Shown: piece after piece, positions 32,301 through 59,499 of the stretch | Layout: the number at the start of each line of letters is the position of its first letter | Position numbering within the stretch: the stretch's first letter is position 1 | Made by a program: the position numbers and the translations under genes | The notes under the pieces: generated by a model | Told to the model about the DNA's origin: nothing | What the model saw: only the letters and a program-made list of their open reading frames with translations | Databases searched by the model: none | Assembly (NCBI GenBank): GCA_053919585.1 | Contig: CM132823.1 | Length of the DNA: 64,000 nt | Source: Euprymna scolopes | Lineage: Eukaryota | Strand: one strand, 5' to 3'

Positions 32301-34240
32301 AATCGTATACTCTATGGAAATATGAGAAGCACCAATATTTTGCCATGAAATATGAATCGTATACTCTATGGAAATATGAGAAGCACCAATATTTTGCCAT
32401 GAAATATGAATCGTATACTCTATGGAAATATGAGAAGCACCAATATTTTGCCATGAAATATGAATCGTATACTCTATGGAAATATGAGAAGCACCAATAT
32501 TTTGCCATGAAATATGAATCGTATACTCTATGGAAATATGAGAAGCACCAATATTTTGCCATGAAATATGAATCGTATACTCTATGGAAATATGAGAAGC
32601 ACCAATATTTTGCCATGAAATATGAATCGTATACTCTATGGAAATATGAGAAGCACCAATATTTTGCCATGAAATATGAATCGTATACTCTATGGAAATA
32701 TGAGAAGCACCAATATTTTGCCATGAAATATGAATCGTATACTCTATGGAAATATGAGAAGTACCAATATTTTGCTATGAAATATGAACCATATACTCTA
32801 TGGAAATATGAGAAGCACCAATATTTTGCCATGAAATATGAATCGTATACTCTATGGAAATATGAGAAGTACCAATATTTTGCCATGAAATATGAATCAT
32901 ATACTCTATGGAAATATGAGAAGCACCAATATTTTGCCATGAAATATGAATCGTATACTCTATGGAAATATGAGAAGCACCAATATTTTGCCATGAAATA
33001 TGAATCGTATACTCTATGGAAATATAAGAAGCACCAATATTTTGCCATGAAATATGAATCGTATACTCTATGGAAATATGAGAAGTACCAATATTTTGCT
33101 ATGAAATATGAATTGTATACTCTATGGAAATATGAGAAGCACCAATATTTTGCCATGAAATATGAATCGTATACTCTATGGAAATATGAGAAGCACCAAT
33201 ATTTTGCCATGAAATATGAATCGTATACTCTATGGAAATATGAGAAGTACCAATATTTTGCCATGAAATATGAATCGTATACTCTATGGAAATATGAGAA
33301 GTACCAATATTTTGCCATGAAATATGAATCGTATACTCTATGGAAATATGAGAAGCACCAATATTTTGCCATGAAATATGAATCGTATACTCTATGGAAA
33401 TATGAGAAGTACCAATATTTTGCTATGAAATATGAATCGTATACTCTATGGAAATATGAGAAGCACCAATATTTTGCCATGAAATATGAATCGTATACTC
33501 TATGGAAATATGAGAAGCACCAATATTTTGCCATGAAATATGAATCGTATACTCTATGGAAATATGAGAAGTACCAATATTTTGCTATGAAATATGAATC
33601 GTATACTCTATGGAAATATGAGAAGCACCAATATTTTGCCATGAAATATGAATCGTATACTCTATGGAAATATGAGAAGCACCAATATTTTGCCATGAAA
33701 TATGAATCGTATACTCTATGGAAATATGAGAAGAACCAATATTTTGCTATGAAATATGAATCGTATACTCTATGGAAATATGAGAAGCACCAATATTTTG
33801 CCATGAAATATGAATCGTATACTCTATGGAAATATGAGAAGCACCAATATTTTGCCATGAAATATGAATCGTATACTCTATGGAAATATGAGAAGCACCA
33901 ATATTTTGCCATGAAATATGAATCGTATACTCTATTGAAATATGAGAAGTACCAATATTTTGCTATGAAATATGAATCGTATACTCTATGGAAATATGAG
34001 AAGCACCAATATTTTGCCATGAAATATGAATCGTATACTCTATGGAAATATGAGAAGCACCAATATTTTACCATGAAATATGAATCGTATACTCTATGGA
34101 AATATGAGAAGCACCAATATTTTGCCATGAAATATGAATCGTATACTCTATGGAAATATGAGAAGCACCAATATTTTGCCATGAAATATGAATCGTATAC
34201 TCTATGGAAACCTGAGAAATACCAATATTTTGCTACAGAT
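29305..34240. repeat. Tandem satellite, 91 x 54 bp
   Basis: Unit g[c/t]accaatattttgc[c/t]atgaaatatgaa[t/c]c[g/a]tatactctatggaaatatgagaa. Unit starts at 29305 and 34219 are 4914 = 91x54 bp apart, so there is no net indel. Confidence 0.99.
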
Positions 34241-34977: not shown

Positions 34978-36711
34978 TTAGCTTGGTCCTCTAGGACACC
35001 TGTGTGCTTTGCAACCGTGCGTTTTACAGTACTGTGTTGGCTGGTTTTCGTCTATTTCGCAGGCCTGTATCATCCAGTCCTCGACGTCGGAGTCGTCGGA
35101 GATTCGCACGTTTTCTACTTCTTCTCCAGCCATGAGGTCCTGGAACAGCTGTCTGCGTGCTTTCATGTATCCTGCCTGTTTGTCTGGTGACAATCCTTCC
35201 ACTGCTTGGACAGTGAAATTTGTAGATGCGGCTGGTTCTTCTATATCCTCCTCCTCCTGGAATTGGTAGGTCTGGTTCGTATAGTCCATGACGTATTGTC
35301 TCCAAACGGTTAGCCACATTGTAGGATTCAATTCTCGGACTCCCCAACCCTTTAGGGCCGGCATAGGCCTTTTGGTTTCGTATAGGAACATGCGGTTGTG
35401 CATTGCCATGCGTTCCTGGGGTACGTGTCGCCATGGGTCGTCGTTGGATGTAGAGAGACACGGTGTCCTTTCTAGGTATCGTTCGGCCTGGTGCTTTACG
35501 TTGACTGCTGTCGTTGTGCCCTCAAGTATACATTTGCCCTCCTCTACATTTTGTGGTGTAAACCACATTTCGTCTGTGTAGATAAGGGTCTTATCGACGC
35601 ACGAACCGAACGTGAAGTTGTCGGAGGCCTGACATCGCATTCGGCCGCAATTCATGAGGCCGTTCCTGATCGATCTGAGCACGTATGATTTGCCAGAGTT
35701 ACTGGGTCCCGTTATGTGGAACCCGTTCTTTTTTGCTCGTATCATGTGGCATACTTCGAACAGGTTTCTACCGAACTCAACCGGATCGAAATTGTGGTAT
35801 TGGGCCCATGCGTCGTAAATGTCCAACGACTTCTGCACTGACCAATACCTGTTACCGTCCATGCTGAAGAGGTCCTTCTTTTGACGGATCTGTTCAAATA
35901 TGGGGGTGACCTTTGTTTGGATCTGTAGGTCGCTTGCTGCCGCCTGCATGATCGGTTGAATATTTTGGGTATTGGTAAAGATGTGTTCCCACGTGTCCCG
36001 GACCTTTGTATTGGCAGATTGTTTACAGTAGAGCATGACTTTTGCCATGTCAGTACTGTTACATTTTTTCATTATGTCTAAAATGAATTTATATTTTTGA
36101 CCTCTCAGGGTCGATTTTCCAGTTAGACCTGTGTCTACGGTCGGCTCGTCCTGTTTCTTTAAGGGCTTTTCGCATATTTTTCTGTACGCGGCTAGTTGAC
36201 CGGGCGTTTCCAGGTGCCCTGCAGCTACTACTGAGCGTTTCGACGGGTCCATTGTCAGGTAACTGCAGAGTCCGTACGGGTTGTAAATCTTCTGGCATGA
36301 AATTTGGTACGGGTTGATTTGCCGTTCCGCCTGTAGTTTTTTCATTTGCACGTAACTGTGCTCACACGTAGGGTGGTTGTGGTGCCACGTGATCATGTGG
36401 AAATGGTCTACGTCTGCGCAATGTTTCAGACTGCTTGGCCCCGCTACGAGGTATACTATTATGTAGGGTCGCTGGTCGAGAATTCTGGCGAAGTACCCGT
36501 GGGTAGCGTTTGATGGCTGTAACGTTATCGCATCCTGGTATGGTTTGGTCTCCGTAGTTCCTGGACTTAGTCTGAATTCTCCCTCGGTTTCCCAGCGGTA
36601 GATCCAGGTGTAGGGACGGATTTGTTTGCCGTTGACAGTTTCTCCGTTTACTAGGTCGTTGAATTGTTGTTGTTCCTCTCTTTGGGTGTTGCTGCTGGTC
36701 GTGGCTTCCAT
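34978..36711 (-). CDS. NS1: Endogenous parvovirus NS1 (HUH nuclease + SF3 helicase), copy 1
   Basis: HUH DHFHMI, catalytic-Tyr-like YGLCSYL, Walker A GPSNSGKS, Walker B IYTDEM, motif C STSN. TATAAAA ~45 nt upstream (36757-36763). Confidence 0.9.
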   Translation of the reverse strand: MEATTSSNTQREEQQQFNDLVNGETVNGKQIRPYTWIYRWETEGEFRLSPGTTETKPYQDAITLQPSNATHGYFARILDQRPYIIVYLVAGPSSLKHCADVDHFHMITWHHNHPTCEHSYVQMKKLQAERQINPYQISCQKIYNPYGLCSYLTMDPSKRSVVAAGHLETPGQLAAYRKICEKPLKKQDEPTVDTGLTGKSTLRGQKYKFILDIMKKCNSTDMAKVMLYCKQSANTKVRDTWEHIFTNTQNIQPIMQAAASDLQIQTKVTPIFEQIRQKKDLFSMDGNRYWSVQKSLDIYDAWAQYHNFDPVEFGRNLFEVCHMIRAKKNGFHITGPSNSGKSYVLRSIRNGLMNCGRMRCQASDNFTFGSCVDKTLIYTDEMWFTPQNVEEGKCILEGTTTAVNVKHQAERYLERTPCLSTSNDDPWRHVPQERMAMHNRMFLYETKRPMPALKGWGVRELNPTMWLTVWRQYVMDYTNQTYQFQEEEDIEEPAASTNFTVQAVEGLSPDKQAGYMKARRQLFQDLMAGEEVENVRISDDSDVEDWMIQACEIDENQPTQYCKTHGCKAHRCPRGPS

Positions 36712-37814: not shown

Positions 37815-39534
37815 TTAGTTTGTTACTGTAGGACATCTGTGTGCCTTGCAACCGTGTGTCTTACAGTACTGCGTCGGCTGGTTTTCGTCTATTTCGCATG
37901 TTTCAGTCATCCAGTCCTCGACGTCGGAGTCGTCTGATATGCGCAGGTTTTGTACCTCCTCTCCTGCCATGAGGTCCTTGAAGAGCTGTCTCCGAGCTTT
38001 CATGTATCCTGCCTGTTTGTCCGGTGACAGGCCTTCTACTGCTTGGACAGTGAAGTTTGTAGATGCGGCTGGTTCGTCTATATCCTCCTCCTCCTGGAAT
38101 TAGTACGTCTGGTTCGTATAGTCCATGACGTATTGTCTCCAGACGGTTAGCCACATGGTTGGATTTAGTTCTCGGACTCCCCAACCTTTTAGGGCAGGCA
38201 TGGGCCTTTTGGTCTCGTACAGGAACATTCGGTTGTGCATTGCCGTTCGTTCAAGGGGTCGTCGTTACTTGTAGACAGGCATGGTGTTCTCTCTAAGTAT
38301 TGTTCCGCCTGATGCTTTACGTTTACTGCTGTTGTAGTACCCTCCAGGATGCACTTTCCCTCCTCTACATTCTGTGGTGTGAACCACATTTCGTCCGTGT
38401 AGATGAGGGTCTTGTCCACGCAGGATCCGAACGTGAAGTTGTCGGAGGCCTGACATCGCATCCGGCCGCAGTTCATGAGGCCGTTCCTGATCGACCTCAG
38501 CACGTACGATTTGCCGGAGTTACTTGGTCCTGTTATGTGGAACCCGTTCTTTTTTGCGCGTATCATATGGCAGACCTCGAATAGGTTTCTTCCGAACTCC
38601 ACTGGATCGAAGTTATGATGTTGGGCCCACGCGTCGTAAATGTCCAACGACTTTTGCACTGACCAATACCTGTTACCGTCCATGCTGAAGAGGTCCTTCT
38701 TTTGACGGATCTGTTCGAATATGGGTGTGACCTTTGTTTGGATCTGTAGGTCGCTTGCTGCCGCCTGCATGATCGGTTGAATATTTTGGGTATTGGTAAA
38801 GATGTGTTCCCACGTGTCCCGGACCTTTGTATTGGCAGATTGTTTACAGTAGAGCATGACTTTTGCCATGTCAGTACTGTTACATTTTTTCATTATGTCT
38901 AAAATGAATTTATATTTTTGACCTCTCGGGGTCGATTTTCCAGTTAGACCTGTGTCTACGGTCGGCTCGTCCTGTTTCTTTAAGGGCTTGTCGCATATTT
39001 TTCTGTACGCGGCTAGTTGACCGGGCGTTTCCAGGTGCCCTGAAGCTACTACTGAGCGTTTCGACGGGTCCATTGTCAGGTAACTGCAGAGTCCGTACGG
39101 GTTGTAAATCTTCTGGCATGAAATTTGGTACGGGTTTATCTGTCGTTCCGCCTGTAGTTTTTTCATTTGCACGTAACTGTGCTCGCATGTAGGGTGGTTG
39201 TGGTGCCACGTGATCATGTGGAAGTGGTCCACGTCTGCGCAATGTTTCAGACTGCTTGGCCCCGCTACGTGGTATACTATTATGTAGGGTTGCTGGTCGA
39301 GAATTCTGGCCAAGTACCCGTGGGTAGCGTTTGCTGGCTGTAACGTTAGCGCATCCTGGTATGGTTTGGTCTCCGTCGTCCCCGGCTTTAGGCTGAATTC
39401 TCTCTCGGTTTCCCAGCGATAGATCCAGGTGTACGGCCGGATTTGTTTGCCGTTGACTGTTTCTCCGTTAACTAAGTTGTTGAATTGTTGTTGTTCCTCT
39501 CGTTGGGTGCTGCTGCTGCTGGTCGTGGCTTCCA
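37815..39534 (-). pseudogene. NS1: Endogenous parvovirus NS1, copy 2 (disrupted)
   Basis: Same motifs as copy 1. A frameshifting deletion at ~38255 removes WRHV, and there is a CAA>TAA stop at ~38100. TATA at 39581-39587. Confidence 0.9.
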
Positions 39535-43858: not shown

Positions 43859-44180
43859 ACGCTCCGCTGCCGTTGTCGTTCGCGACTGTGCTCGCCTCCG
43901 AATCGACTTCCATACCTGCTTCGCAGCTAGCAGTGTAAGTAGGATCAAGTTTAATTCGTTTAGGTGGGGGATCGAAGTAGTCGTCCAGTCCCAGGTAATG
44001 CTTTGCTCTGAGTGCCCCTCGCGATAAAGCTCCCAACACACCTGTTCCAGCAGAGTCCTTGTAGAATTGGTCATCTGCTTCTTTGGTCTTGCCTTTTCCG
44101 TAGTTGAAATCGTGTCTTTTTGCGGCCCAGTCCAAGCGATTTAGGGGAGGCAGGTATTTTTTGTAGTCGAGGTTTTTGCC
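43857..44180 (-). pseudogene. VP1: Parvoviral VP1-unique region fragment with phospholipase A2 domain
   Basis: GKNLD...PLNRLDWAAKRHDFNY...EADDQF (parvoviral PLA2 HDxxY motif), then NLS-like PPPKRIKL and a Gly/Ser-rich start. Confidence 0.85.
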
Positions 44181-45130
44181 CTGAATAAAACCTGAATCGC
44201 ATACTCCATGGAAACATGAGAAATACCAATATTTTGCTACAGATAAGATGCCATCATCCAAACACGAATCGCATTGGAATTCGGATGACGAAGCAAATTC
44301 TTGTTACATTAATTCCTTCGACAGAATCTGTGAAACAACAAAGTTTTTCCAGTTCACAAATTCTTCATGACATTTCAGACATTTGCAATTTGTTTTGGCT
44401 CTGTCCAAAGTTTTGATGAAACATGACTCACATACTCCATGAAAACATGAGAAGCATTTGAAGAGTCTAGTTGTCTGTAATACCTTTTTTCTTTTCTTTG
44501 TGAGTTTATTTTATTGTTTCTAAATGTATAGTGACATTTTTTAAATATAATTTTCTTTTTTCATCCTGTTTTCTGTCGTGTGTGTTTGTATTAGTTTTTT
44601 CTTAATTGTTTTGTGTATTTTCTTCTTAATCATCAGTCTTTCATATATTGTGTAATTGGTGCTCCCATCCTCATGTGTGAATGGTAGGTGTATGATGCAA
44701 AGGTCGCATAAGAAACCAAACATACCGATATATAAGAAATAAATGTAGATTTATTTAGATAAAAATGCAAGAGAGAATAAGTGACAATAAGAGTTTGGTA
44801 AAAAGAGATGATTGGAAATGTTGCTTGTGGTATTGGAATGCGTTATTGTCAATCTTTACTTGTTAATAGTCCAGCGAAAAGAGAAAGAAATCTATACAAA
44901 AGGAAGTGACGTAGTTGCATTGCCCTCTGGTGGCAAGGCATGTGTTGTGTTTGTGAGTTTGTTGGCTGGGAAATTTCAATTCCCACAAATTCTCATCTTC
45001 TCCAGCAAGAGTTAATAAGTTATTGTGGACAGTGACAGAAGGAGACAGATCTGTCTTCCTTGCCAGTTGAGTCCCCTGATGATTTTTGTGTTTCTACAAC
45101 TGGCTAAAAATAGTTCCTAAGAGACAAATG
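44173..45130 (-). repeat. Duplicate of host segment 20047-21058 (RING/B-box fragment + motif-rich upstream region)
   Basis: Colinear high-identity match, sandwiched between viral VP and NS1 fragments. Confidence 0.9.
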
Positions 45131-45630
45131 TGGAACCCGTTCTTTTTGGCCCGTATCATGTGGCATACCTCGAAGAGGTTCCGCCCGAATTCGACTGGAT
45201 CGAAACCGTGATACTCGGCCCATGCGTCGTAAATGTCCAGGCTTTTTTGTACAGTCCAGTAGCGGTTTCCGTCCATTGAGAACAGGTCCTTTTTCTGTCA
45301 TATCTGCTCGAATATTGGTGTCACTTTTGTTTGGATTTGCAGGTCACTGGCCGCGGCCTGCATTATGGGCTGAATGTTTTGAGTGTTCGTGAAAATGTGT
45401 TCCCATGTATCACGAAGTTTAGAGTTTGTAGACTGCTTGCAGTACAACATGACCTTGGCCATGTCGGTGCTGTTGCAGCGCCGCATGATGTCCAATATGA
45501 ACTTGTATTTTTGTCCACGTAGTGTGGACTTACCAGTGAAGCCTGTCTCAACATTCGGTTCCTCAGTTTTCTGCAGCGGTTTGTCACAGATTCTTCTGTA
45601 GATCGCAAGTTGCCCGGGCGTCTCCATGGT
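45128..45630 (-). pseudogene. NS1: Parvovirus NS1 internal fragment, copy 4
   Basis: ETPGQLAIYRRICDKPLQK...KVTPIFEQI*...YWTVQKSLDIYDAW...KKNGFH. A distinct variant, disrupted. Confidence 0.9.
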
Positions 45631-45782
45631 GTTTGTCCTCTCCCTCATGAATTGGCACTTCGGCAATTTAAGCCTCAGGCCGTGCTCCCTCAGGCTGCTC
45701 ATCACCTGCCGCAGGTGGACATAGTGCTCCTCCGGGTTCCTTGAAAATATCAGGATGTCGTCTAGGTAGGCCATGGCAAAGT
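45631..45782 (-). mobile_element. Gypsy RT fragment duplicated from 49570-49721
   Basis: FAMAYLDDILIFSRNPEEH...KCQFMRERT, essentially identical to the downstream copy. Confidence 0.9.
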
Positions 45783-46337
45783 GGGCCCAGATGGCCAATG
45801 TTTGGAAATAGAGGTGAAGCATCATCACAAATGACTTTTATAAGATTATTTTCAAAACTTTTGAGGCATATGATCAACTTGGGTTCATTTTAATTAGATT
45901 TTAACTGATATTTGTCTCTGAAAACAGTTCTGGGACCAAATTGACCTATTTTGGCTGTGTCACAAAATGTCGCGAATCTACCGAAATTTACTAAATTCAG
46001 AGAAATATTGAAATAGGCATTATTTCAGTTTGGATTGAGATAGGAAAGTGGTTGAGGGCTTGTTAGAAGCGTATGGCCAAGGAGAACATAATGGAAGCAA
46101 TTCATGTTGAGCTAATATACCAGTTTATGTATTGGCTTTTATAAAGTAATGAATCTGTCTGAAATTGTGTATTTCTGTTGAAAATTGCACAGGTAACAAT
46201 ACAAACATTATGTGTATTATTGAATTTTCTCAAAACCTCACATAAAGATAATATAAATTAATCAAGAAAAATGTCTTCAATAAGGCTTGCATACCAGTTC
46301 TTGGACAAGCCAAACAACCGATTATGTGAACATATGG
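45777..46337 (-). mobile_element. 3' end remnant of a second Transib-like element
   Basis: Terminus caaagtgggcccagatggcc. Last codons SHNRLFGLSKNWYASLIEDIFLD* are paralogous to the adjacent transposase C-terminus. Confidence 0.75.
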
Positions 46338-49300
46338 CACACTGGCCCCAGATCGCCAAACTTTGGAAATAGAGATTAGGCGAAGTCTTACTTTGATTTT
46401 TCTGGCATTTTCTCGTTTTTTTTTTCAGTTTTATACCCAAGTACAGAGTAACTAAAGCATATTTTGACTTAGAGAAAGTGTATAAAAGGATACAGGAACC
46501 AAAAATGCTTTGATTTTGTCTAAATTCACGAAATTAGGAGAAATTATAAAATTGGAGTAGTTTCGTTGACTCAACCGAGATAATTCAGTTTGTGTTATGT
46601 TTCTCATTCCATACTGGCAGATAAGAATATAAAATAAAACAACAAATAAATCACCATCTAGTCAAGAAAAATGTCTTCAACGAGGCTTGCATACCACCGC
46701 TTCGGTAGACCTACCAACCGACCATGCGACCGAATGGTGTGATCGTCAGCTCCACATTCCGTGCAAAATTTTCTTGCCTGAAAATGAGTGGTTATGTTCT
46801 GGATGATTGGATCTGATCGTTCCAGTAACCTGGCCATTACATCAGTTAATTGGAGCAGTGGGTCAGTTTTCCTCGACAAGAACTGCAAGTAGTTGCGAAT
46901 GTCTTTGTTGTTCGACTCTAAGCATTCCTCTGACAGACTTCCCAGTCCATGAGCATCATTTAGACTCATCAATTCTGTTGAATGATGAAGAGTCCCATGC
47001 AAGGTGTGATTCATCATGACCCATGGGAAGTTGTCACACAAATTGTATGAAGTCTGCTCACAAAGTTCTTTGAACTTCATCAGATCGATCTTACGTGACG
47101 ACGACACAACCGATAGAACAGTGGAGAGCTGACGATGAAGGAGAAGCAGGTTTTCTCGGTGTTTTTCATCAACTAATTTTTCGATTGAAGCTAGAACTTC
47201 CTCTGAAAAGAAGCGACGGCCTTGTGGACCATTGGTTGATGTCCCACCTTTTCCACCAGCAGAGTTGACTCTATCAAGATACAGGCCTGTCTCTGTGTAG
47301 ATCGCTTTGAGAACTCGATCCTTCGTTCGACTGACAGGTTCACCACGAACGTCGGACCTCTCAATCCACTGTTGGTAGTCAGCATGGCACCGATACAAAA
47401 CCTTCAGGAACCACGTTGTTCCATTGATGTACGAATGAGTCACAGTGATGCTTGATTGGTCAGATGTTGTGAGTGGCTTCTTGGTTAATCCTTGACGAGT
47501 CTCAAAATCTCCTTGTTTTGCTTTGACTTTACCATTCTCATCAACTAGTTCATTGTACAGCTCGAGAGAATTCTTTGCCGATCTGTTAATGGGAAAGCCC
47601 TCTGCAACCTTGGTTCTGTCAGTCCAATCAGCCCCTCCCAACCCTGAAATGTCCCTTTTGAATTTCAGATCCTTCATTGAATCGTGTACTATGACATTCA
47701 CATCATATCCTTGACCATCAGCAGTAACAAAAATTCCATCTGAAGCCAACTCTTGGCGTGCTTTGTCTGTAGTGGGAACGACCATATTAAGATCTTCATC
47801 GGTCTCTTTCTCCCTGATCAAGAATAGTGGTCTTAATGTTCTACAGTTGTTTGGCGAGTGATTCTGCCACAGACAAAAAGAAGAACCGTCCTGGTAACGA
47901 GCAAGTAGTTTCAGTGGTGTAATGCCATACTGGAACATATTTTCAGTTGCGTCCAGCATACTTGTAGACTTCCACACTACTTGTTGACCAGCACCGTCAC
48001 ATCCATCTTTAAACACCATTTCAAGGACACCATCTCTGCATTTATCTTTTATGATTTTCTTAGGGATCAAGGATATGATGGACTCGATCGTCATTTTCAC
48101 TAGGTCCTTGTACTGCACCTGAACTCCACTGTCATCAAGAACTGGGGAGATACTGGGGCGGAGCTTTTTACGTCCCTCCAACAACTCATTGCTGGTTGGA
48201 AAATAGATTCCCTTCGCAGCAAGTATGTGCCTCATCTTTCTCATTTGCTCCCTACTCAACGTTAATGAATGCATCAATGCAATCGCTTCATTGATCTCAA
48301 AGGAATGAATATCGTTCACATTGGACGAAAATATCTCATACCCAACTCGAGCTGTCTTCTTTTCCGATTGAATATTCACACGATGAATCATATATCCTAG
48401 CAACTGAGTGACTGAAAGCTCAGGACATTCCTTTGCAGCGTATTCTTCAATGTAGTCGAGCAGACCCTGTGTTCTTTCCTTCTGCATTCTCTCCCCTAAG
48501 TTGACAAAACTCTTCCTTTGCTTCTTTCCAACTTGTGGACAGTTCCCTTCCATTTCGATTTCTTCTTTCGATGCTTGAGCAAGGATTTCGGTGTTTGCTA
48601 GGCGTTTCTTTTTCAATCGTTTGAAATGGTTCCATGCATTCAAGAAGAAGCCACTGATTTCTTTGTTTTCGTGAAAACCATGAGTTTCTCTGAATTGGCG
48701 AAAGCATTTGGCATATTCAGGTGGTTTGGTACGGCATAATGCAGCCTGACTAATGATGGCTTCGAAGACCTGATATTCTGTGGTGAGAACATTGTTGCCT
48801 GCCATCTGAATATGATAATTTCTTTTTTTTAAACTTCAGTTAACCCGATAATAGCCTGTAATGAAGAAAAAAGCATAGACATTAACTGAATGGTCATATA
48901 GAATAATAGAATACTCAAAATATTTGATAGAACATGTAAAAGCAAATTAAAACTTTGGCAAAATGCCCGAATTTGGTAATTTGGTCCCAGATCCCGGAAA
49001 AATGAAAATTCTATTTGTCAGAAAAAAAATTTACTGCTAAGATTTACAAAACAAATTTGACATAGTTAGAAAGGTCTTAGGCTATATTTTTTGAAACATA
49101 TATACTTTGATATGTAAATCTTAGCGGTTTTTGAGCTATTTGAGGAATTGAACAAAAAATAAATGACAATTTTGCTGAAACATTAAGCTAAAATTTCACT
49201 AAATAAGCTTTTATCTTATCAAAATTTCATCTATTATACCACAAACAAGACCTCTGTTAGAAAAAAAAGATGAATTTAGTTATACAAATTGAAAAAATAA

Positions 49301-49564
49301 CATCAAAAAATCCATTATGGCATTTTATTTACAAATTCTGGCTTAGTTTATATGATAAGGTTCATATGTAGTCAAGAATATGATCTCGACACGATTTTGA
49401 ATTTCCGCTAGGTTTGAGATAGCATAAAATCACTTCACGTGATGCTACAGACCTAATTTTTTTTTTGTTTGTTCAGAAATTTTATTTACTTACAGAATTT
49501 CTATAGTTCAAGGTACATAGAGAAAGTTTTTTTTTAGGCTATTTCCACGTCTGGGCCCACTGTG
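46338..49564 (-). mobile_element. Transib/RAG1-like DNA transposon
   Basis: Termini CACACTGGCCCCAGA and (reverse complement) CACAGTGGGCCCAGA. No matching TSD. Confidence 0.85.
46658..48805 (-). CDS. Transib/RAG1-core-like DDE transposase (715 aa; lacks the CxxC after the 2nd Asp)
   Basis: FKDGCDG (RAG1 KESCDG), SMKDLK, INRSAKNSLELY...RQGLTKKPL (RAG1 ITRSHAENLQRY...VKGVSAKPF), HGTLHH, LSEECLESNNKDIR (RAG1 SEGNESGNKLFR). Confidence 0.85.
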   Translation of the reverse strand: MAGNNVLTTEYQVFEAIISQAALCRTKPPEYAKCFRQFRETHGFHENKEISGFFLNAWNHFKRLKKKRLANTEILAQASKEEIEMEGNCPQVGKKQRKSFVNLGERMQKERTQGLLDYIEEYAAKECPELSVTQLLGYMIHRVNIQSEKKTARVGYEIFSSNVNDIHSFEINEAIALMHSLTLSREQMRKMRHILAAKGIYFPTSNELLEGRKKLRPSISPVLDDSGVQVQYKDLVKMTIESIISLIPKKIIKDKCRDGVLEMVFKDGCDGAGQQVVWKSTSMLDATENMFQYGITPLKLLARYQDGSSFCLWQNHSPNNCRTLRPLFLIREKETDEDLNMVVPTTDKARQELASDGIFVTADGQGYDVNVIVHDSMKDLKFKRDISGLGGADWTDRTKVAEGFPINRSAKNSLELYNELVDENGKVKAKQGDFETRQGLTKKPLTTSDQSSITVTHSYINGTTWFLKVLYRCHADYQQWIERSDVRGEPVSRTKDRVLKAIYTETGLYLDRVNSAGGKGGTSTNGPQGRRFFSEEVLASIEKLVDEKHRENLLLLHRQLSTVLSVVSSSRKIDLMKFKELCEQTSYNLCDNFPWVMMNHTLHGTLHHSTELMSLNDAHGLGSLSEECLESNNKDIRNYLQFLSRKTDPLLQLTDVMARLLERSDPIIQNITTHFQARKFCTECGADDHTIRSHGRLVGLPKRWYASLVEDIFLD

Positions 49565-49998
49565 AGGTAGTTTGTCCTCTCCCTCATGAATTGGCACTTC
49601 GGCAATTTAAGCCTCAGGCCGTGCTCCCTCAGGCTGCTCATCACCTGCCGCAGGTGGACATAGTGCTCCTCCGGGTTCCTTGAAAATATCAGGATGTCGT
49701 CTAGGTAGGCCATGGCAAAGTCCTACATGCCCCCCAGCACAATGGACATCAACTGAGTAAACACCCCCGGAGCGTTAGCCCACCCAAAAGGCATCATTCT
49801 AAAATGAAATAGCCCGGCATGACAAGTTAAAGGCGGCCTTCTCCCGATCCCTCTTCTTTAGGCTCACCTGCCAATAACCCGACCTCAAGTCCAGGATGGA
49901 GAAGCACGTGGATCTCCCTAGCAAAGCCAAGATATCATCAATCAGGGGAAGGGGCACCGCCAACAGCTTGGTGACGGCATTCAGCCGCCGGAAATCTA

Positions 49999-51324
49999 CA
50001 GGGTGGCCGAAAAGTCCCAGGACGCTATACATGTATTTTTAATAAAACACAGTATTTTTTAATGAAACACAAAACATATACATTCAACAAAAAAAGAGAA
50101 CTTTATTAGAAACAAAGCAGAAAACAACTAGAGTAATTTAGTGGTCTAGGGGATCAGTATGTTGGCCCTCGTTGTTCTTGCACAATTCCATTCGCCTCCA
50201 GGTTCTTTGTGCCATTTTTTTTAGAGAATTCCTTGATACGCTAGCAAAAGCTGCAATAATCGCATGCTTTAGCTGATCAATGGTTTCGTATCTAATACCA
50301 GAAACTTGACCTTTAATTAAACCCCATAATGAGTTGTCTGGAGTGGTCAAGTCGGGGCTTCGTGGTTGCCAAGCAAAAGAATTTGATCCGCGCCCAATCC
50401 ATCGATCACGAAAATCTGCATTTAGCAGCGCTCTCACAGGAAGTGCATAATGTGCGGGTGCACCATCTTGCTGTAGCCATACACGATCCTTAATACCAAG
50501 TTCTATTAACTTGGGAATGAACCAGTTTCTAATCATGTTGGCATATGATTCCTGATTGACATTGCCATCAAAGAAATAAGGACCAATCAAATGTTCAGAT
50601 GTCAATGCAGCCCAAATCATGACATGTGGAGGATTATTTTCAACTTCTTCTTTGTAAAAGGGGTTTTCTTTAGCCCAGAAATATATGTTTCGACTTTTAG
50701 AACTTTTATAAATGGCGCATTCATCGCTGAATATTATCTTTCTGTGATTTCTTGGACCATCAGGAAAGCGTTTTAAAAATTTCTCACAGAATTTTTTTCT
50801 TCGATCCATATCTTCATCTGACAACTGATTTACCGAGATGGGCTTATAAGCTTTGACATCCAAGTCCTTTTTCATATGATCCATCATGGTAGCCCTTGGT
50901 ATTCCAAGTTCAGCAGAACGTTTTCTGGTGGATTTCTTGGGAGACTGTTGCAGTGATTCTTGAACACCAGCACACGTTTCCTTTCGTGTTTTAGGCCTGC
51001 CACTTCTTGCCTGATCCAGAACGCTACCTGTTTCAAAAACTTTCTTCTCCCACAGATACAGATTACTTCTTGATAGCACGGGCTTTCCAAATCTTTCTGT
51101 GAAAGCACTTCGAACATCTTCCATAGTCATGTCATTCCTGATGCGGTCGTGAACCCAAACAGCAGCAATTAAGCGCTCCTCAACAGTAAATACACTGATG
51201 TCAGTCATAACCTGAAAAAATAAATGAAATAAATTGTTTTAACAACATTAGAATATTAAAATCAATCATATTTAACAGCATTAAAATATTAAAAATAGTG
51301 TCCTGGGACTTTTCGGCCACCCTG
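49999..51324 (-). mobile_element. Tc1/mariner transposon, rosa (DD41D)-like, full length
   Basis: TIR cagggtggccgaaaagtcccaggac with TA TSD. Splits Gypsy RT at FCV|DFR. Confidence 0.95.
50138..51208 (-). CDS. DDxD transposase (DD42D by my count), intact 356 aa
   Basis: RSGRP, FSDE, QQDGAPAH, WQPRSPDLTTPD. Confidence 0.92.
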   Translation of the reverse strand: MTDISVFTVEERLIAAVWVHDRIRNDMTMEDVRSAFTERFGKPVLSRSNLYLWEKKVFETGSVLDQARSGRPKTRKETCAGVQESLQQSPKKSTRKRSAELGIPRATMMDHMKKDLDVKAYKPISVNQLSDEDMDRRKKFCEKFLKRFPDGPRNHRKIIFSDECAIYKSSKSRNIYFWAKENPFYKEEVENNPPHVMIWAALTSEHLIGPYFFDGNVNQESYANMIRNWFIPKLIELGIKDRVWLQQDGAPAHYALPVRALLNADFRDRWIGRGSNSFAWQPRSPDLTTPDNSLWGLIKGQVSGIRYETIDQLKHAIIAAFASVSRNSLKKMAQRTWRRMELCKNNEGQHTDPLDH

Positions 51325-53741
51325 TACACAGAATCGGTGCCCCCCATCCTTTTTCTCGACCACTACTATCGGGAAGCTCCAGGGAGAGCCTGACCTCTCT
51401 ATAACTCCTGTTTCCAGCGTTACATTTACCGCTTCTCTCACTAGTTTTCTCTTATGAAGCGGTGTTCTATAAGGCCTTAGTTTAATGGGCAGGTGTCCAC
51501 CCGTGTCTATCCCCACCTCTATGGTCCGGGTCTGTCCCAGCTCCTTATCTGTCATGGCTATCACATCCCTGTTGTCTCTCAGTAACTGCCTGATTTCGTA
51601 CCTATATCTATCCGGTACTACCCGTACCTTCTCCATCTGCCTCAGAGGGCGGGTGTAGGCTAACTTTTCTCCCTTCCCGATGGTCACGTTTGTATTCGTG
51701 GTGTTTGCCACCAGTACTGGGACTGTCTCGCATCCCTGAACCACGCCCTCGCTCAGTCACTCCCTCCTCGTTGTCTGTATACTTCTCGGTCGGGTCTATC
51801 TGAAACACCCTTCCTTCCAGTCCATCCGTGCCGTCCACCTTGCCCCCACAGGACATGACTGTCCGTGGGGGAAGACTCTCGTCTCCCTCGGCCTTCACCG
51901 GAAGAGGAGCGTATTCTGTGAACCCCCCCCCCCAGTGGGATCTCCACCCCTCCCACCGTCAAGGTGGCCGGGCTGAAACTCAGTGTAGCTCCCCTCACCC
52001 TGATCCAGTCTCCACCCAGAATCATCTCGCTACACAGTCTGGATACCACATAGAAGGGAAATCTCACCCTTTGTTTCGCTACTTGCACCGGCAGCCATAC
52101 CTTCCCCATCACTGACAGCCGACTACCGTCGGCCTGACTGACCTCTAGGTCCGACAGGTATAATTTTCTCCCTCCCGCGACCGCATCATAGATCCCGCGT
52201 CTATCAACAAGATCGATGCCCCAGTGTCGACTAGTGCCTCTACCCGGGTGGTCCCTACCACCACACTACAAGTAAATTCCTTGTCTTCCGTAAGCAGGGA
52301 CAGCACCTGCGCCTTCTTCCCTTCTCGCTCTGGGGCTTCCTCCCAGTGTTCTCCCACCGTGGACATTGGGGCTGGCAGCAGCAGTCCCCTCCTGGTCTCG
52401 TCCTCCCACTCTCCCCTGCACTGCAGCGCCTCTCTCGAGGCATTGGACAGTCTGGACTCCCTCTATACATCCCAGAGTTCTCCTCCCAGGCGTGACCGCC
52501 CCTCTGGTGGGAGCAGTCCTCCCTGTGACTGGTCCTCCCACCCAGGCGGCTCTCTCAGAACTGGCAGTTGGTGGCAAGGTGGTCATCCTTGTTGCATATC
52601 CAACCTGCGAGGGGTTTAGATTTTATGGGGGCCACCCTGCTCCTTACTACCCCTGGGGAGGTCTTAGGTGGGGTACCCCGGTCATGTGTTCTCAATCCCC
52701 ATCCCTGGTTTCCCGCCACACCACACCATTGAGCTTCGTGCCCAGACTGTCCACAACGGGTGCAGCCGGGACCGGCCAGGCGGGATGATCTCCCAAGACC
52801 GGTGGCCTTCGCCCCCACAGGTCCAGCACACAAATCCAGGCCGGCCCCGGGCGAATCCTCCGGACCCATCTCATTCTGTTCCCCAGTTCCCCGCTCCTAT
52901 TTCGCGACTTCTCCCCCATTATTCTTTTCTGCAACCACGCATAGTTCTTAGCTATTTTGCGTGCTTCCTCTTGCGTGTGCGGGCCACCCTTTAGCACCTC
53001 TATCTTGGTCGCTTCGTCCTGCAATGGATCCACCATCGTGTCAACTAGCATTGCTTGGGTTGTGGGCATATCGCAGTGTTTGGTCACTGGATCCGCCAGC
53101 ACCGCCAGTTCCTGCATGCGGTTGACCAGTCCATCCACATCCTCCCCGTCGGCCATCTCTATTCGAGACAGCTCGGGCACCGCCTGCACCGTGGTCTTTT
53201 CGCTGGCGAATTTCCTCTTCACTTGATCGCGAAAATCAGACCAGGCTATGTGTGGGTTACTTTCCAAGCATTTGCATATATATTCCGAGGCCGCCCCGGT
53301 CGCCCCGTCGCAGGCCAGCAGCACCATTTCCCTCTCTGTCAAACCATAAACTAATCTTTTCTTTTCTTTGATCGCCAACCACTCCTTAACTCTCCTCGGG
53401 TCTCCCCCATATGCGGGTATGCTAACCCCCCATAATGGCCGCTCCATGGTCATCTGCAGCTCAACAGTCTGCTCTGACCCCTCCCCCATCGATTGACCCG
53501 CCCCGAATCCCTCCTGAGAATGCATTGTCATTATTTTTTTTTTTTTTTTCCACCCAATAACAGGGCTACTCCTCACCCCCTACAAGGTTGAACAGCACCC
53601 CACACAAAACACAAACAGCCGCTGAAACCGAGCAAGGTATACAAAAGAGGGAACCAGCAAAAAAAAGAAAGGACACCCGGTCTGCTGCACCTGTTTTCTT
53701 CTGCAACTGGCGGATGGTTAACGAGCTGTCCAGACTGTATA

Positions 53742-55858: not shown

Positions 55859-57845
55859 TCAATCGGAGTCACTGAGCACTTCCTCACATTCTAAAAATAG
55901 CTGTGACGTCAGCCCTCGTCCGGTGATCTGTCGTAGGTACAGTGCTAATGTGTAGTTTATGATTTTTTTTTTTTTTTTTTTTTTTTTGGGGGGTCACGAA
56001 GATGTCGTCGTCAGGCTCCTCAGTCTCTGACTCACTGAGCACTATCACACCGGAGACCGGTGTGTCCTCGACGAGTGTGTCCTGTGAGAAGCTCGGCGCC
56101 GCGGGGCTGGGTTGGTTTATTCTTGTTGGGCACCTGTGTGCTTTGCAGCCGTGCGTTTTGCAGTATTGTGTTGGTTGGTTTTCGTCTATTTCGCAGGGCT
56201 GTACCATCCAGTCTTCTACGTCGGAGTCGTCGGAGATGCGCACGTTTTCTACTTCTTCTCCGGCCATAAGGTCCTGGAATAATTGTCTGCGTGCCTTGCA
56301 GTACCCTGCTTGTTTGTCTGGCGACAACCCTTCCACTGCCTGCACAGTGAAGTGTGTCGATGCCGCGGGTTCCTCTATGTCCTCCTCCTCTTGGAACTGG
56401 TATGTTTGGTTTGTGTAGTCCATGACGTATTGTCTCCATACGGTCAACCACATCGTCGGATTCAATTCACGGACTCCCCAACCTTTTAGTGCCGGCATCG
56501 GTCGTTTTGTTTCGTATAGGAACATTCGGTTGTGCATTGCCGTTCGTTCCTGGGGTACGTGCCGCCATGGATCGTCGTTGGAAGTCGAGAGACACAGTGT
56601 TCTTTCGAGGTAGCGTTCTGCCTGGTGTTTGACGTTCACCGCAGTTGTCGTCCCTTCCAGGATGCATTTTCCTTCCTCTACATTTTGTTGGGTAAACCAC
56701 ATTTCGTCAGTGTATATTAATGTTTTGTCTACGCATGATCCGAACGTGAAGTTGTCGGATGCTTGGCAGCGCATCCTGCCGCAGTTCATGAGGCCGTTCC
56801 TGACCGATCTAAGCACGTACGATTTGCCCGAGTTACTGGGTCCCGTTATGTGGAACCCGTTCTTTTTCGCCCGTATCATGTGGCAAACCTCGAACAAGTT
56901 TCTGCCGAACTCTACTGGGTCGAAATTGTGATACTGCGACCATGCGTCGTAAATGTCTAACGACTTTTGGACGGTCCAATACCTGTTTCCGTCCATGCTG
57001 AAGAGGTCCTTTTTCTGTCTTATTTGTTCGAAGATTGGTGTCACCTTCGTTTGTATTTGTAAGTCGCTAGCTGCCGCCTGCATAATGGGTTGTATGTTTT
57101 GCGTGTTAGTGAAGATGTGGTCCCACGTTTCACGCACTTTCGCACTGGCAGATTGTTTGCAGTAGAGCATGACTTTAGCCATGTCCGTACTGTTACATTT
57201 TCGCATGATCTCGAGGATAAACTTGTATTTCTGTCCTCTGAGGGTCGATTTTCCAGTCAGGCCTGTGTCTACTGTTGGTTCCTCTGGTGTCTTTAATGGC
57301 TTGTCGCAGATTCTTCTGTAAGTGGCGAGTTGCCCGGGCGTCTCCAGGTGTCCTGCAGCTACCACTGAGCGTTTTGCCGGGTCCATCGTCAGGTAACTGC
57401 AGAGACCGTACGGGTTGTAGATCTTTTGGCAGGAGATTTGGTAAGGGTTGATTTGCCGTTCGCTTTGTAGTTTCTTCATTTGCACGTAAGTGTGCTCACA
57501 TGTCGGGTGGTTGTGGTGCCACGTGATCATGTGGAAATGGTCTACGTCTGCGCAGTGTTTTAAGCTGCTTGGTCCTGCTACGTGATATACGACTATGTAG
57601 GGACGCTGGTCGAGAATTCTGGCGAAGTAACCGTGGGTGGCGTTAGATGGCTGTAAGGTTATGGAATCCTGGTATGGTTTGGTTTCTGTAGATCCTGGAC
57701 TTAGTTTGAATTCTCCCTCGGTTTCCCAACGGTAGATCCAGGTGTAGGGACGGATCTGTTTGCCGTTGACAGTTTCTCCGTTCACCAGGTCGTTGAATTT
57801 TTGTTGTTCCTCTCTTTGGGTGCCGCTGCTGGTCGAGCCTTCCAT
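55859..57845 (-). CDS. NS1: Endogenous parvovirus NS1, copy 3 (near intact; 1-nt frameshift in an A25 run)
   Basis: All NS1 motifs present and no internal stops. With 24 instead of 25 A the frame would end ...INYTLALYLRQITGRGLTSQLFLECEEVLSDSD*. TATA at 57891-57897. Confidence 0.9.
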
Positions 57846-58587: not shown

Positions 58588-59499
58588 TCCTGCAACGAGA
58601 TGCAAGAACAATTCATTCTTCATTTGTGTACACCTTTTTATTAAGTATTTATCTTTCCCTAGCCGGCTAAAATTCTCTATAACACAGGTAATTTATTTTG
58701 AGACATAGTTAAGGACCAGATGAGATCCACCACACCCGAAGCAAAATGAATGGAGGGGCCCTTCTCCACCCACCAGCCTATCCGAGCATCGCCAACCCCA
58801 ACCGATCCAAGACGCGTCTACTTTGCAATACCTCACTCACTCAATCTAATCTTGGGGCTCAGCATTCTTGGCTCCCCTCAACCGATATTTAATGGGTATC
58901 TCCCCTGTTTCAGGGATCCCTTTTTCTTTCTGCCACCTCTCACAAAGTTGGGCAAGAGGTATCTCATCCTCTGACTCCCAATCACTTCCACTGGTTCTAT
59001 TTCCAGTATTTGACATCAGCGGCTGTTCATCGACTTCTCGATCTCCAGGCTTTATCATTTTATCTCCTAGTTCCGTTACTTCGAAGACTCGTGGGTCTTC
59101 TATCAGGTTATAATCACTTTCCTCGCCTGATTCTTCCTCCTCAGAATCTGCTAAAGTGACCCTTCTCCTTTTTCATCGTGTTGGCTTTAACTCTGGTCCT
59201 TCCCAAGTATCTATTCTAGCCAACTTTAACTCATTTGCATGGGCTTGTTTCACCTTCCCTGAAACTTGGTCCCATATCACAAACGTGACCGGTCCGGTCT
59301 GATCTACGATTCTATAATAAGGCTCCCATCTAGCACTCAATTTGCCCTGTCGCAGATTAACCTTATAATACACTGGGTTTCCAATTCCCAGCTTTACTTC
59401 CTCTCTTCCTTTATTAATTCTGGCATTATGCCTTTTCTGAGCACGGGCGATTCTTCGCCTCGCTTGCGCGAATATTCTATGCTGCTTCTCAATTATTAA

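What the first reader, a model, noticed from the sequence alone, without database searches (positions are those of the whole stretch)
46338..49564. RAG1-like transposon with an exact RSS heptamer and a ProtoRAG-like C-terminal Zn motif
Seen: one end reads CACAGTG + 23 nt + AAAAAAAAC (7/9 match to the RSS nonamer), while the other end, CACACTG, has no convincing nonamer. The protein ends CTECGADDHTIRSH (C-x2-C-x4-H-x4-H). Known: invertebrate RAG1-like proteins carry a CX2CX3GHX4C C-terminal tail motif that is not a feature of canonical Transib. No RAG2-like ORF is visible. Inference: a single-gene intermediate between Transib and RAG1L.
Basis: partly seen in the sequence, partly recalled or inferred. 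Interest (0 to 1): 0.72.

Follow-up and report, generated by a model that had tools for sequence, protein, structure and literature searches.

The report
Defective Transib transposon with zinc-knuckle tail
This is a damaged copy of a Transib DNA transposon, the jumping-gene family related to the RAG1 antibody-gene recombinase; it belongs to a branch that keeps several RAG1-like features, but such branches have been described before, so it is a new family member rather than a new kind of element.

Summary
Window 46338-49564 is a 3,227-bp single-gene element. It ends in CACACTG and CACAGTG, and its minus-strand ORF encodes a 715-aa RAG1/Transib-type DDE transposase with C-x2-C-x4-H-x4-H near the C-terminus. 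There is no RAG2-like ORF.

The tail motif is conserved in every homologue with an intact C-terminus (42 of 69), down to 38% identity. Related elements show bipartite, asymmetric ends: heptamer, then GGCCCAGA, then a 9-mer (TGGAAATAG) after 10 nt at one end and 19 nt at the other. One relative has a perfect 5-bp target duplication.

A family profile scores HzTransib (207 bits) above amphioxus RAG1L (147) and RAG1 (~90). The family keeps a ~40-residue stretch after the ZnC2 Cys pair that HzTransib lacks and RAG1L has. It also shares signature segments with the ctenophore "Subgroup I" Transibs of Tao et al. 2022. That group was already described as a Transib-RAG1L intermediate with a zinc-knuckle tail and asymmetric ends.

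So this is a new family of a known kind, with a CCHH tail instead of CCGHC. The window copy has lost the ZnC2 Cys pair through a 30-bp deletion, has no matching target duplication, and is probably dead. No formal phylogeny could be run.

The parts
46338..49564 (-). Whole Transib-type element (3,227 bp), with the transposase on the minus strand
   Evidence: The inverted termini and single ORF are seen. It is the only full copy in the window.
49558..49564 (-). 5' TIR heptamer CACAGTG
   Evidence: Read. The same heptamer is found in L002, L004, L005 and L020.
49550..49557 (-). Heptamer-proximal conserved block GGCCCAGA, a candidate analogue of the TR2 region clamped by the RAG1L tail
   Evidence: The block is conserved at both ends of every family element examined. 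The assigned function is inferred.
49539..49547 (-). Second TIR element TGGAAATAG, 10 nt after the 5' heptamer
   Evidence: Seen. The spacing is the same in the 5' TIRs of L002, L004 and L005.
49527..49535 (-).
   Evidence: Read. An A-rich tract (CAAAAA-type) follows the 9-mer in all seven short-spacer TIRs seen.
48806..49526 (-). 5' non-coding region (presumed promoter/UTR), with no ORF of 60 aa or more
   Evidence: Part of it (48979-49131) is 90% identical to the 5' region of L001.
46658..48805 (-). Transposase ORF, 715 aa, single exon, stop codon included
   Evidence: The ORF is listed. Pfam RAG1 PF12940 matches at 31 bits. PDB matches are HzTransib at 1.3e-25 and BbRAG1L at 5e-12. It is 88% identical to P0001.
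47996..47998 (-). Catalytic Asp 270 (RAG1 D600 equivalent, in KDGCDGAG)
   Evidence: The column is invariant in alignment A1.
47669..47671 (-). Catalytic Asp 379 (RAG1 D708 equivalent, in MKDLK)
   Evidence: The column is invariant in alignment A1.
46928..46930 (-). Catalytic Glu 626 (RAG1 E962 equivalent, in LSEE)
47626..47627 (-). Junction of a 30-bp in-frame deletion that removes 10 residues, including the ZnC2 Cys-x2-Cys pair
   Evidence: The relative L001/P0001 has the 30 bp between two GCYGAT direct repeats. C397 and C400 are at least 90% conserved in A1.
46982..46999 (-). ZnH2 histidines H603 and H608 (RAG1 H937/H942 equivalents), retained
46724..46765 (-). C-terminal tail motif CTECGADDHTIRSH (C-x2-C-x4-H-x4-H), a zinc-knuckle-like tail
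   Evidence: It is conserved in 42 of 69 homologues, which is every one with an intact C-terminus, and in more distant metagenome loci.
46373..46657 (-). 3' non-coding region
46364..46372 (+). Second TIR element TGGAAATAG of the 3' TIR, 19 nt after the heptamer
   Evidence: The 19-nt spacing is the same in L002, L003, L004 and L005 and in fragment A.
46338..46352 (+). 3' TIR heptamer CACACTG plus GCCCCAGA
45777..46337 (-). Fragment A: the 3' end of a second, diverged element of the same family (TIR with 19-nt spacer and TGGAAATAG, 482 bp non-coding, and the last 26 codons at 46259-46337). It abuts the 3' TIR of the main element.
   Evidence: (D2, D3, I15).
49565..49721 (-). Flanking reverse-transcriptase gene fragment into which the 5' end is inserted. 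Positions 49570-49721 are duplicated 100% at 45631-45782.
   Evidence: RVT_1, 3.3e-11.

Best explanation
Window 46338-49564 is one copy of a cut-and-paste Transib DNA transposon from a family that is abundant in marine metagenome assemblies. Relatives occur in krill and a rotifer.

Protein. The single gene encodes a RAG1-core-like DDE transposase. It has an NBD-like and DDBD-like N-terminal part, an RNase-H catalytic domain, a ZnC2/ZnH2 zinc site and a C-terminal zinc-knuckle-like tail (CCHH).

Mechanism (inferred from HzTransib, BbRAGL and RAG). An intact family member would bind one short-spacer end (heptamer-10-TGGAAATAG) and one long-spacer end (heptamer-19-TGGAAATAG). It would nick next to the CAC of each heptamer and form hairpins on the flanking DNA. 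It would then integrate the blunt-ended element with a 5-bp stagger. The heptamer-proximal block GGCCCAGA is the likely binding site of the C-terminal knuckle, as TR2 is for the RAG1L tail. The asymmetrically spaced 9-mer is the likely binding site of the NBD-like dimer, as in the 12/23 rule.

Classification. By its features the family belongs with, or next to, the Subgroup I Transibs of Tao et al. 2022.

This copy. It lacks the two ZnC2 cysteines because of a 30-bp deletion, and it sits in a rearranged nest of other transposable elements without a matching target duplication. It is most likely unable to transpose itself. At best it could be moved in trans.
For: Shown:
- RAG1/Transib homology: Pfam PF12940; phmmer against PDB; family profile against PDB gives HzTransib 6e-60 at 207 bits, BbRAG1L 9e-42 at 147 bits and RAG1 about 1e-24.
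- Structure: the AlphaFold model of the intact relative P0001 has pLDDT 87.8. It matches RAG1 cores (TM 0.58-0.66 on the query over ~645 columns), HzTransib (target TM 0.79) and BbRAG1L (target TM 0.78).
- The D, D, E and ZnH2 residues are invariant or nearly invariant in the family, and all are present in the window copy.
- The tail motif is present in 42 of 69 homologues and in loci at 35-39% identity.
- Asymmetric bipartite TIRs recur in L002, L003, L004, L005 and L020.
- L005 has a perfect 5-bp GC-rich TSD, CTGGG.
- The elements carry a single gene.
- Purifying selection along the lineage: dN/dS 0.14 against L001.
- About 40 residues after the CxxC align with BbRAG1L and are missing in HzTransib.
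- Segments are shared with MleTransib_6236, 2823 and 3931: SGLGGAxCxLC, INRS...RKGLT, GKGGT, GLEANNK, RSDP, the knuckle at the same distance after RSDP, and an acidic-hydrophobic C-terminus.
- The 30-bp deletion of the Cys pair.

Inferred: the cleavage chemistry, which domain reads which TIR block, and inactivity of this copy.
Against: - No maximum-likelihood tree with named Subgroup I, Subgroup II, bacterial and RAG1L references could be built. Those sequences could not be brought in by reference, so the Subgroup I assignment rests on features and by-eye comparison.
- The tail is CCHH with Gly after the second Cys, not the defining Cx2Cx3GHx4C.
- The profile score is higher to HzTransib (Subgroup II) than to RAG1L.
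- Matching 5-bp TSDs are absent from the window copy and from L002, L004 and L020. Chimeric flanks in short assemblies of a repeat are a possible reason, but this was not shown.
- Zinc binding by the tail and its DNA target are untested.
Confidence: 0.82

Rival explanations
1. One reading: a previously unrecognised single-gene evolutionary intermediate between Transib and RAG1L, that is, a new kind of element.
For: The RAG1L-like features are real. The family has the zinc-knuckle spacing in the tail, the segment after ZnC2 that HzTransib lacks, an NBD-like N-terminal part covered by RAG1 core chains, and asymmetric ends. No homologue carries a functional name in the databases searched.
Against: Elements with exactly this combination are published as Subgroup I Transibs and are explicitly called intermediates (PMC9435367). 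Martin et al. 2023 list the zinc-knuckle tail, asymmetric TIRs and an NBD motif as already identified in Transib. The family is closer to HzTransib than to RAG1L by profile score.
Confidence: 0.1
2. The CCHH tail is not homologous to the RAG1L / Subgroup I zinc knuckle. It would be an independent acquisition, or not a zinc or DNA-binding module at all, and the family would be an ordinary Transib lineage with a lineage-specific tail.
For: The last ligand is always His, never Cys. The conserved Gly sits after the second Cys, not before the His. HMMER did not extend the alignment to the tail of BbRAG1L. Model confidence in the tail is lower, at pLDDT about 68-80.
Against: The ligand spacing is the same. 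The distance after the RSDP motif is the same as in the Mnemiopsis Transibs (13-14 residues). A similar acidic-hydrophobic extreme C-terminus follows. The four ligands are at least 90% conserved.
Confidence: 0.12
3. A domesticated RAG1-like host gene rather than a transposon.
For: The ORF is intact with no stop codons, and dN/dS is low against a relative.
Against: It is bounded by conserved TIRs. It lies inside a reverse-transcriptase gene among other transposable elements. It lacks the ZnC2 cysteines. Related copies occur as 3-5 kb elements with the same ends, and one has a TSD. The low dN/dS was measured between transposon lineages.
Confidence: 0.02

Closest known systems
Subgroup I Transib transposons (Tao et al. 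2022, Natl Sci Rev, PMC9435367; e.g. MleTransib_6236/2823/3931 of Mnemiopsis leidyi, Transib-9_HM of Hydra)
   Same: Both are single-gene elements with a CACAGTG-type heptamer followed by G-rich bases. Both have a second conserved TIR block at unequal spacing on the two ends. Both retain the segment after the ZnC2 Cys pair (alpha11-alpha12 region). Both have a zinc-knuckle-spaced tail 13-14 residues after RSDP and an acidic-hydrophobic C-terminus. The shared motifs are SGLGGAxCxLC, INRS...RKGLT, GKGGT and GLEANNK.
   Different: The tail here is C-x2-C-G-x3-H-x4-H, not Cx2Cx3GHx4C. The gene is intron-less, whereas the Mnemiopsis predictions have introns. The second TIR block has a different sequence (TGGAAATAG or TGGTAAAAC, against ATGACATTAAG). 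The hosts appear to be marine arthropods or zooplankton. Phylogenetic grouping was not tested.
HzTransib (Helicoverpa zea; PDB 6PQN and others; Hencken 2012, Liu 2019), a Subgroup II 'canonical' Transib
   Same: It is the best sequence match among solved structures (207 bits) and has the same fold (target TM 0.79). It shares the DDE triad, the ZnC2/ZnH2 site, the CAC-heptamer ends and the 5-bp TSD.
   Different: HzTransib has 18 residues where this family has about 57 after the CxxC. Only about 533 columns align, against about 645 for RAG1 cores. A Subgroup II relative read has an acidic tail without Cys.
ProtoRAG / RAGL transposons (BbRAG1L-BbRAG2L, PDB 6B40; Huang 2016, Zhang 2019, Martin 2020)
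   Same: The core fold is the same (target TM 0.78). The alignment is contiguous through the post-ZnC2 segment. The tail has zinc-knuckle spacing, and there is a conserved heptamer-proximal TIR block like TR2.
   Different: This element has no RAG2L gene, no RAG1-type N-terminal zinc-finger or RING region, and a lower profile score (147 bits). Its tail ligand pattern is CCHH. It is 3.2 kb and carries a single gene.
Vertebrate RAG1 and RSS
   Same: The CACAGTG heptamer is identical, and an A-rich nonamer-like tract lies about 22-23 nt away at one end. The catalytic D, D, E and the Cys2/His2 zinc-site positions are shared. The NBD region aligns, with a basic KKQRK at the GGRPR position.
   Different: Sequence similarity is remote (about 18-20% identity, about 90 bits). 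There is no RAG2 partner. The tail is a zinc knuckle rather than acidic. The spacer asymmetry is 10/19 rather than 12/23.

Membership tests
Transib superfamily (Kapitonov & Jurka 2003/2005) | A ~700-aa transposase homologous to the RAG1 core, with the DDE triad | tested here: met
   The ORF is 715 aa. PF12940 matches at 31 bits, above its cut-off of 25. HzTransib matches at 1.3e-25 with a single sequence and 6e-60 with the profile. The fold matches. D270, D379 and E626 are present.
Transib superfamily (Kapitonov & Jurka 2003/2005) | TIRs starting with a CAC heptamer (CACAATG/CACAGTG-like) and an A-rich nonamer-like block about 23 nt inward | tested here: met
   The ends are CACAGTG and CACACTG. 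The A9C tract lies 22-23 nt from the 5' heptamer. The published consensus is quoted.
Transib superfamily (Kapitonov & Jurka 2003/2005) | 5-bp target site duplication | tested here: inconclusive
   The window copy has flanks TACCT and CCATA (transposase orientation), so no TSD. The family member L005 has a perfect CTGGG/CTGGG. L002, L004 and L020 have none, and their flanks may be chimeric assembly.
Transib superfamily (Kapitonov & Jurka 2003/2005) | A 3-4 kb autonomous element with one gene and no RAG2-like ORF | tested here: met
   The element is 3,227 bp with one ORF. The same holds in L005 and L020.
Subgroup I Transib (Tao et al. 2022) | Retains the alpha11-alpha12 region of the zinc-binding domain, which is lost in Subgroup II | tested here: met
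   Profile positions 422-479 align contiguously with BbRAG1L but correspond to only 18 residues in HzTransib. By eye, about 44% identity to MleTransib_6236 in this stretch.
Subgroup I Transib (Tao et al. 2022) | CTT1 tail with Cx2Cx3GHx4C | tested here: inconclusive
   The position and ligand spacing are the same, but the pattern is C-x2-C-G-x3-H-x4-H in all 42 intact homologues and in the metagenome loci. The strict motif is not met.
Subgroup I Transib (Tao et al. 2022) | Asymmetric TIRs | tested here: met
   The 9-mer lies 10 nt from the heptamer at one end and 19 nt at the other in the window, L002, L004, L005 and L020.
Subgroup I Transib (Tao et al. 2022) | Groups with Subgroup I in a maximum-likelihood tree of the core region | not testable with these tools
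   The reference sequences exist only as text in a paper supplement. Word-based searches returned only this family. The bacterial genome scan returned nothing.
RAGL (ProtoRAG-type) transposon | A RAG2-like kelch gene paired with RAG1L inside the TIRs | tested here: not met
   There is no second ORF of 60 aa or more in the non-coding parts of the element. None is found in L005 or L020 either.
RAGL (ProtoRAG-type) transposon | RAG1L closer to RAG1 than to Transib; N-terminal zinc-finger/RING region | tested here: not met
   The profile gives 147 bits to BbRAG1L against 207 to HzTransib. Pfam finds no RAG1 N-terminal zinc-finger family.
Autonomous (active) copy | An intact ZnC2/ZnH2 zinc site and catalytic triad | tested here: not met
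   The triad and the two His are present, but the Cys-x2-Cys pair is removed by a 30-bp deletion at 47626/47627. These Cys are at least 90% conserved in the family.

The most novel reading that the evidence does not exclude
The CCHH-tailed family is a separate, deep Transib lineage, not simply a member of the published Subgroup I. It is widespread and recently active in marine arthropods and zooplankton. It would preserve, in a single protein without RAG2, both ancestral modes of end recognition: a zinc-knuckle tail on a heptamer-proximal block, and an NBD-like dimer on an asymmetrically spaced 9-mer with a 10/19 rule. Different subclades have swapped which end carries the long spacer. It would then be a tractable one-protein model for how the 12/23 rule arose.
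Probability: 0.2. Interest if true: 0.55.

Novelty: new member of a known kind. Interest (0 to 1): 0.3.

Why it matters
Transib elements that keep RAG1L-like features bear on how the V(D)J recombinase arose from a transposon. This family adds an apparently large, unannotated clade with:
- a histidine-ended version of the RAG1L-type zinc-knuckle tail;
- a strongly conserved heptamer-proximal block;
- a clean 10/19 spacer asymmetry.

Intact relatives could be used to test, with one protein, which domain reads which part of the end and whether unequal spacers enforce pairing. The window copy itself is a dead insertion, of value only for annotation.

Tried and rejected
- **Exact look-up of the window protein** in public assemblies found nothing on record, so the source organism stays unknown.
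- **L001**, the closest relative at 88%, has no TIRs within its 3.9-kb contig.
- **A second word-based protein search** with the family alignment returned only more members of the same family and no outgroups. A third would fail for the same reason, because too few 5-mers are shared with HzTransib or RAG1L, so I did not run it.
- **The scan of bacterial and archaeal genomes** found no relative.
- **Cluster look-ups** gave no organism names, and a literature search for assembly GCA_024449665 found nothing.
- **L019** is a decayed fragment and is useless as an outgroup.
- **The fourth TGGAAATAG** in the window (58997-59005) is not next to a heptamer and is a chance match.
- The protein is not left open and the claim does not rest on absence of relatives.
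- **Rearrangement models** (simple nested insertion, adjacent deletion, sister-chromatid transposition) were considered for the 152-nt reverse-transcriptase duplication and fragment A. None fits cleanly, so this stays unexplained.
Full report
**What is there.** Window 46338-49564 is a 3,227-bp element bounded by inverted termini. The + strand reads CACACTGGCCCCAGA at 46338, and the reverse complement of the right end at 49564 reads CACAGTGGGCCCAGA. One long ORF lies on the minus strand (46658-48805, 715 aa). It is flanked by 759 bp of 5' and 320 bp of 3' non-coding sequence that hold no further ORF of 60 aa or more.
- Nine A (49527-49535) lie 22 nt inward of the CACAGTG end and are followed by C.
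- CTECGADDHTIRSH is at residues 681-694 (46724-46765), 21 residues before the stop.
- This is the only full copy in the window.

**The protein.** Pfam gives a weak but above-threshold RAG1 match (PF12940, 31 bits). Against solved structures the best match is the Helicoverpa Transib transposase (6PQN, 1.3e-25), then amphioxus RAG1L (6B40, 5e-12), then RAG1. The word-based search found 69 homologues, later 84. All were pre-annotated only with PF26100 (RAG1_RNase_H). Nearly all come from 2-5 kb contigs of marine and other metagenome assemblies, plus a krill protein (Meganyctiphanes norvegica, 45%) and a rotifer fusion.

An alignment of 36 members (A1) shows these positions as invariant or nearly invariant:
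- the catalytic Asp, Asp and Glu;
- the ZnC2 Cys pair;
- the ZnH2 His pair;
- the four tail ligands.

The AlphaFold model of the intact relative P0001 is confident (pLDDT 87.8). It matches RAG1 cores over about 645 columns, which includes the NBD region. It also matches HzTransib (target TM 0.79) and BbRAG1L (target TM 0.78).

**The tail motif is conserved.** C-x2-C-x4-H-x4-H is present in 42 of 69 homologues, which is every one whose C-terminus is intact. It is also present in metagenome loci at only 35-39% identity. The consensus is C-x-x-C-(G)-x-x-(D/E)-H-T-(I/V)-R-(S/T)-H. The last ligand is always His. However, the motif is not the Cx2Cx3GHx4C that defines the RAG1L tail (PMC7204232).

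**The ends.** I fetched related elements and compared their termini. All share three parts:
- the heptamer (CACAGTG or CACTGTG);
- a conserved block GGCCCAGA directly after it;
- a 9-mer, which is TGGAAATAG in the window's clade and TGGTAAAAC in a 45%-identical clade.

The 9-mer lies 10 nt from the heptamer at one end and 19 nt at the other. In the window, L002, L004 and L005 the short spacer is at the 5' end. In L020, and apparently in L009 and L011, it is at the 3' end.

The short-spacer end is always followed by an A-rich tract. With a 23-nt spacer it matches the classic Transib TIR consensus (CACAATG-23-AAAAAAATC, PMC1131882) at 8 of 9. The 9-mer is the block common to both ends. In the window it occurs at the two TIRs, at the TIR of a neighbouring fragment, and once elsewhere by chance.

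L005, a 3,992-bp element, has a perfect GC-rich 5-bp target duplication (CTGGG). L002, L004 and L020 show none. That may reflect chimeric flanks in assemblies of a repeat, but this is unproven.

**Where the family sits.** The A1 profile scores HzTransib at 207 bits, BbRAG1L at 147 and RAG1 at about 90. The family is therefore a Transib, not a RAG1L. It also has no RAG2-like gene and no RAG1-type N-terminal zinc fingers.

The same alignments show that HzTransib has 18 residues where this family has about 57, directly after the ZnC2 Cys pair. BbRAG1L aligns through that stretch without a break. This is the alpha11-alpha12 region. Tao et al. 2022 (PMC9435367) report it as retained in RAG1L, bacterial Transibs and their Subgroup I Transibs, and lost in Subgroup II (the HzTransib type).

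Their supplement prints the Mnemiopsis Subgroup I proteins. By eye these share the following with this family:
- SGLGGAxCxLC, INRS...DG.IK.K.GD(Y/F)..RKGLT..P, GKGGT, GLEANNK and RSDP;
- a zinc knuckle 13-14 residues after RSDP;
- an acidic-hydrophobic extreme C-terminus.

Their TIRs are also heptamer plus a second block at unequal spacing. The family thus meets two of the three feature criteria of Subgroup I and meets a variant of the third (CCHH instead of CCGHC). I could not run the tree. The reference sequences are available only as text, the searches returned only this family, and the bacterial scan was empty.

**State of this copy.** Compared with the 88%-identical relative L001/P0001, the window ORF lacks 30 bp between two GCYGAT direct repeats. 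The junction is at 47626/47627, and the deletion removes ten residues including the ZnC2 Cys-x2-Cys. The DDE triad and the two His remain. The dN/dS against L001 is 0.14, which reflects past selection on the transposon lineage.

The flanks are not a simple insertion:
- The 5' TIR abuts a reverse-transcriptase gene (RVT_1).
- The 3' TIR abuts the last 26 codons and 3' end of a second, diverged element of the same family (fragment A, 45777-46337).
- A 152-nt piece of the reverse-transcriptase gene is repeated at 100% identity on both sides (45631-45782 and 49570-49721).
- The two 5-bp flanks differ.

I take the copy to be non-autonomous and probably immobile.

**How it most likely works.** This is inference from HzTransib, BbRAGL and RAG. 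An intact family transposase pairs one short-spacer and one long-spacer end. It nicks at the CAC and hairpins the flanks. It then inserts the excised element with a 5-bp stagger. The tail knuckle probably clamps GGCCCAGA, as the RAG1L tail clamps TR2. The NBD-like N-terminal domain, which has a basic KKQRK at the GGRPR position, probably reads the 9-mer. The 9-nt difference in spacing then plays the part of the 12/23 difference.

**Novelty.** RSS-like Transib ends have been known since 2005. Transibs with a RAG1L-type tail, the alpha11-alpha12 region and asymmetric TIRs were described as intermediates in 2022, and this was restated in 2023. What is new here is:
- an unannotated, apparently large family with a His-ended knuckle;
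- a very conserved heptamer-proximal block;
- a 10/19 asymmetry whose polarity differs between subclades.

That makes it a new member of a known kind, of modest interest.

**Limits.**
- There is no outgroup phylogeny, no Repbase comparison and no genome-wide copy census.
- The source organism is unknown.
- The comparison with the Mnemiopsis proteins is by eye, from the paper's supplement.

Noticed in passing
window 45631-45782 and 49570-49721: A 152-nt piece of a reverse-transcriptase gene is present twice at 100% identity. One copy lies left of fragment A and the other right of the element's 5' TIR. The left copy starts 5 nt further into the gene than the right copy, and 5 nt is the Transib TSD length. 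The join to fragment A (…GGCAAAGT|GGGCCCAGA) replaces most of that TIR's heptamer with reverse-transcriptase sequence, like a microhomology repair joint. No simple insertion, deletion or known alternative-transposition model fits. An assembly artefact is not excluded.
   Followed up: partly
window 45777-46337: This is the 3' end of a second, diverged element of the same family: a TIR with a 19-nt spacer and TGGAAATAG, 482 bp of non-coding sequence, and the last 26 codons at 76% nucleotide identity to the main copy. It is cut off exactly at the main element's 3' TIR, and its remainder is not found on the other side.
   Followed up: partly
window 49997-51326: A Tc1/mariner-like element with 47-nt inverted repeats and an intact 356-aa ORF (50138-51208, minus strand; Pfam DDE_3 at 4.4e-5, below the curated cut-off) is inserted in the same reverse-transcriptase-bearing element.
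   Followed up: partly
window 45128-45631; also 56848-57351, 35714-36216, 38535-39037: This is a repeat family whose copies all end at the equivalent of 45631. It carries a 108-aa minus-strand ORF (45298-45624) with no Pfam match. Two copies lie 2,821 bp apart.
   Followed up: no
window ~29300-34200 (and 44174-44239): A long tandem array with a period of about 54 bp. A related unit lies just left of the region studied.
   Followed up: no
L020 465-5846; L009 ~2539; L011 ~1562: In a subclade at about 45% identity (tail ...HTVRTH...EEFFL) the spacer polarity is reversed. The 19-nt spacer is at the 5' end and the 10-nt spacer at the 3' end. The 9-mer is TGGTAAAAC, which is closer to an RSS nonamer.
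   Followed up: partly
window 45929-45966 and 48954-48991; L001 135-287: Sub-terminal sequences containing TCTGGGACCAAAT-like motifs that resemble the TIR core recur in the non-coding parts of the main element, fragment A and L001. They may be extra transposase-binding sites.
   Followed up: no
PMC9435367 supplement, CthTransib_0091: The 'bacterial' Transib that roots the published scheme comes from a 4.5-kb contig of an uncultured SUP05 assembly. The present eukaryotic family is also abundant on 3-5 kb contigs in marine metagenomes. My scan of 185,579 bacterial and archaeal genomes with this family's motifs found no relative. Whether some 'bacterial' Transibs are eukaryotic contamination may be worth a check.
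   Followed up: no
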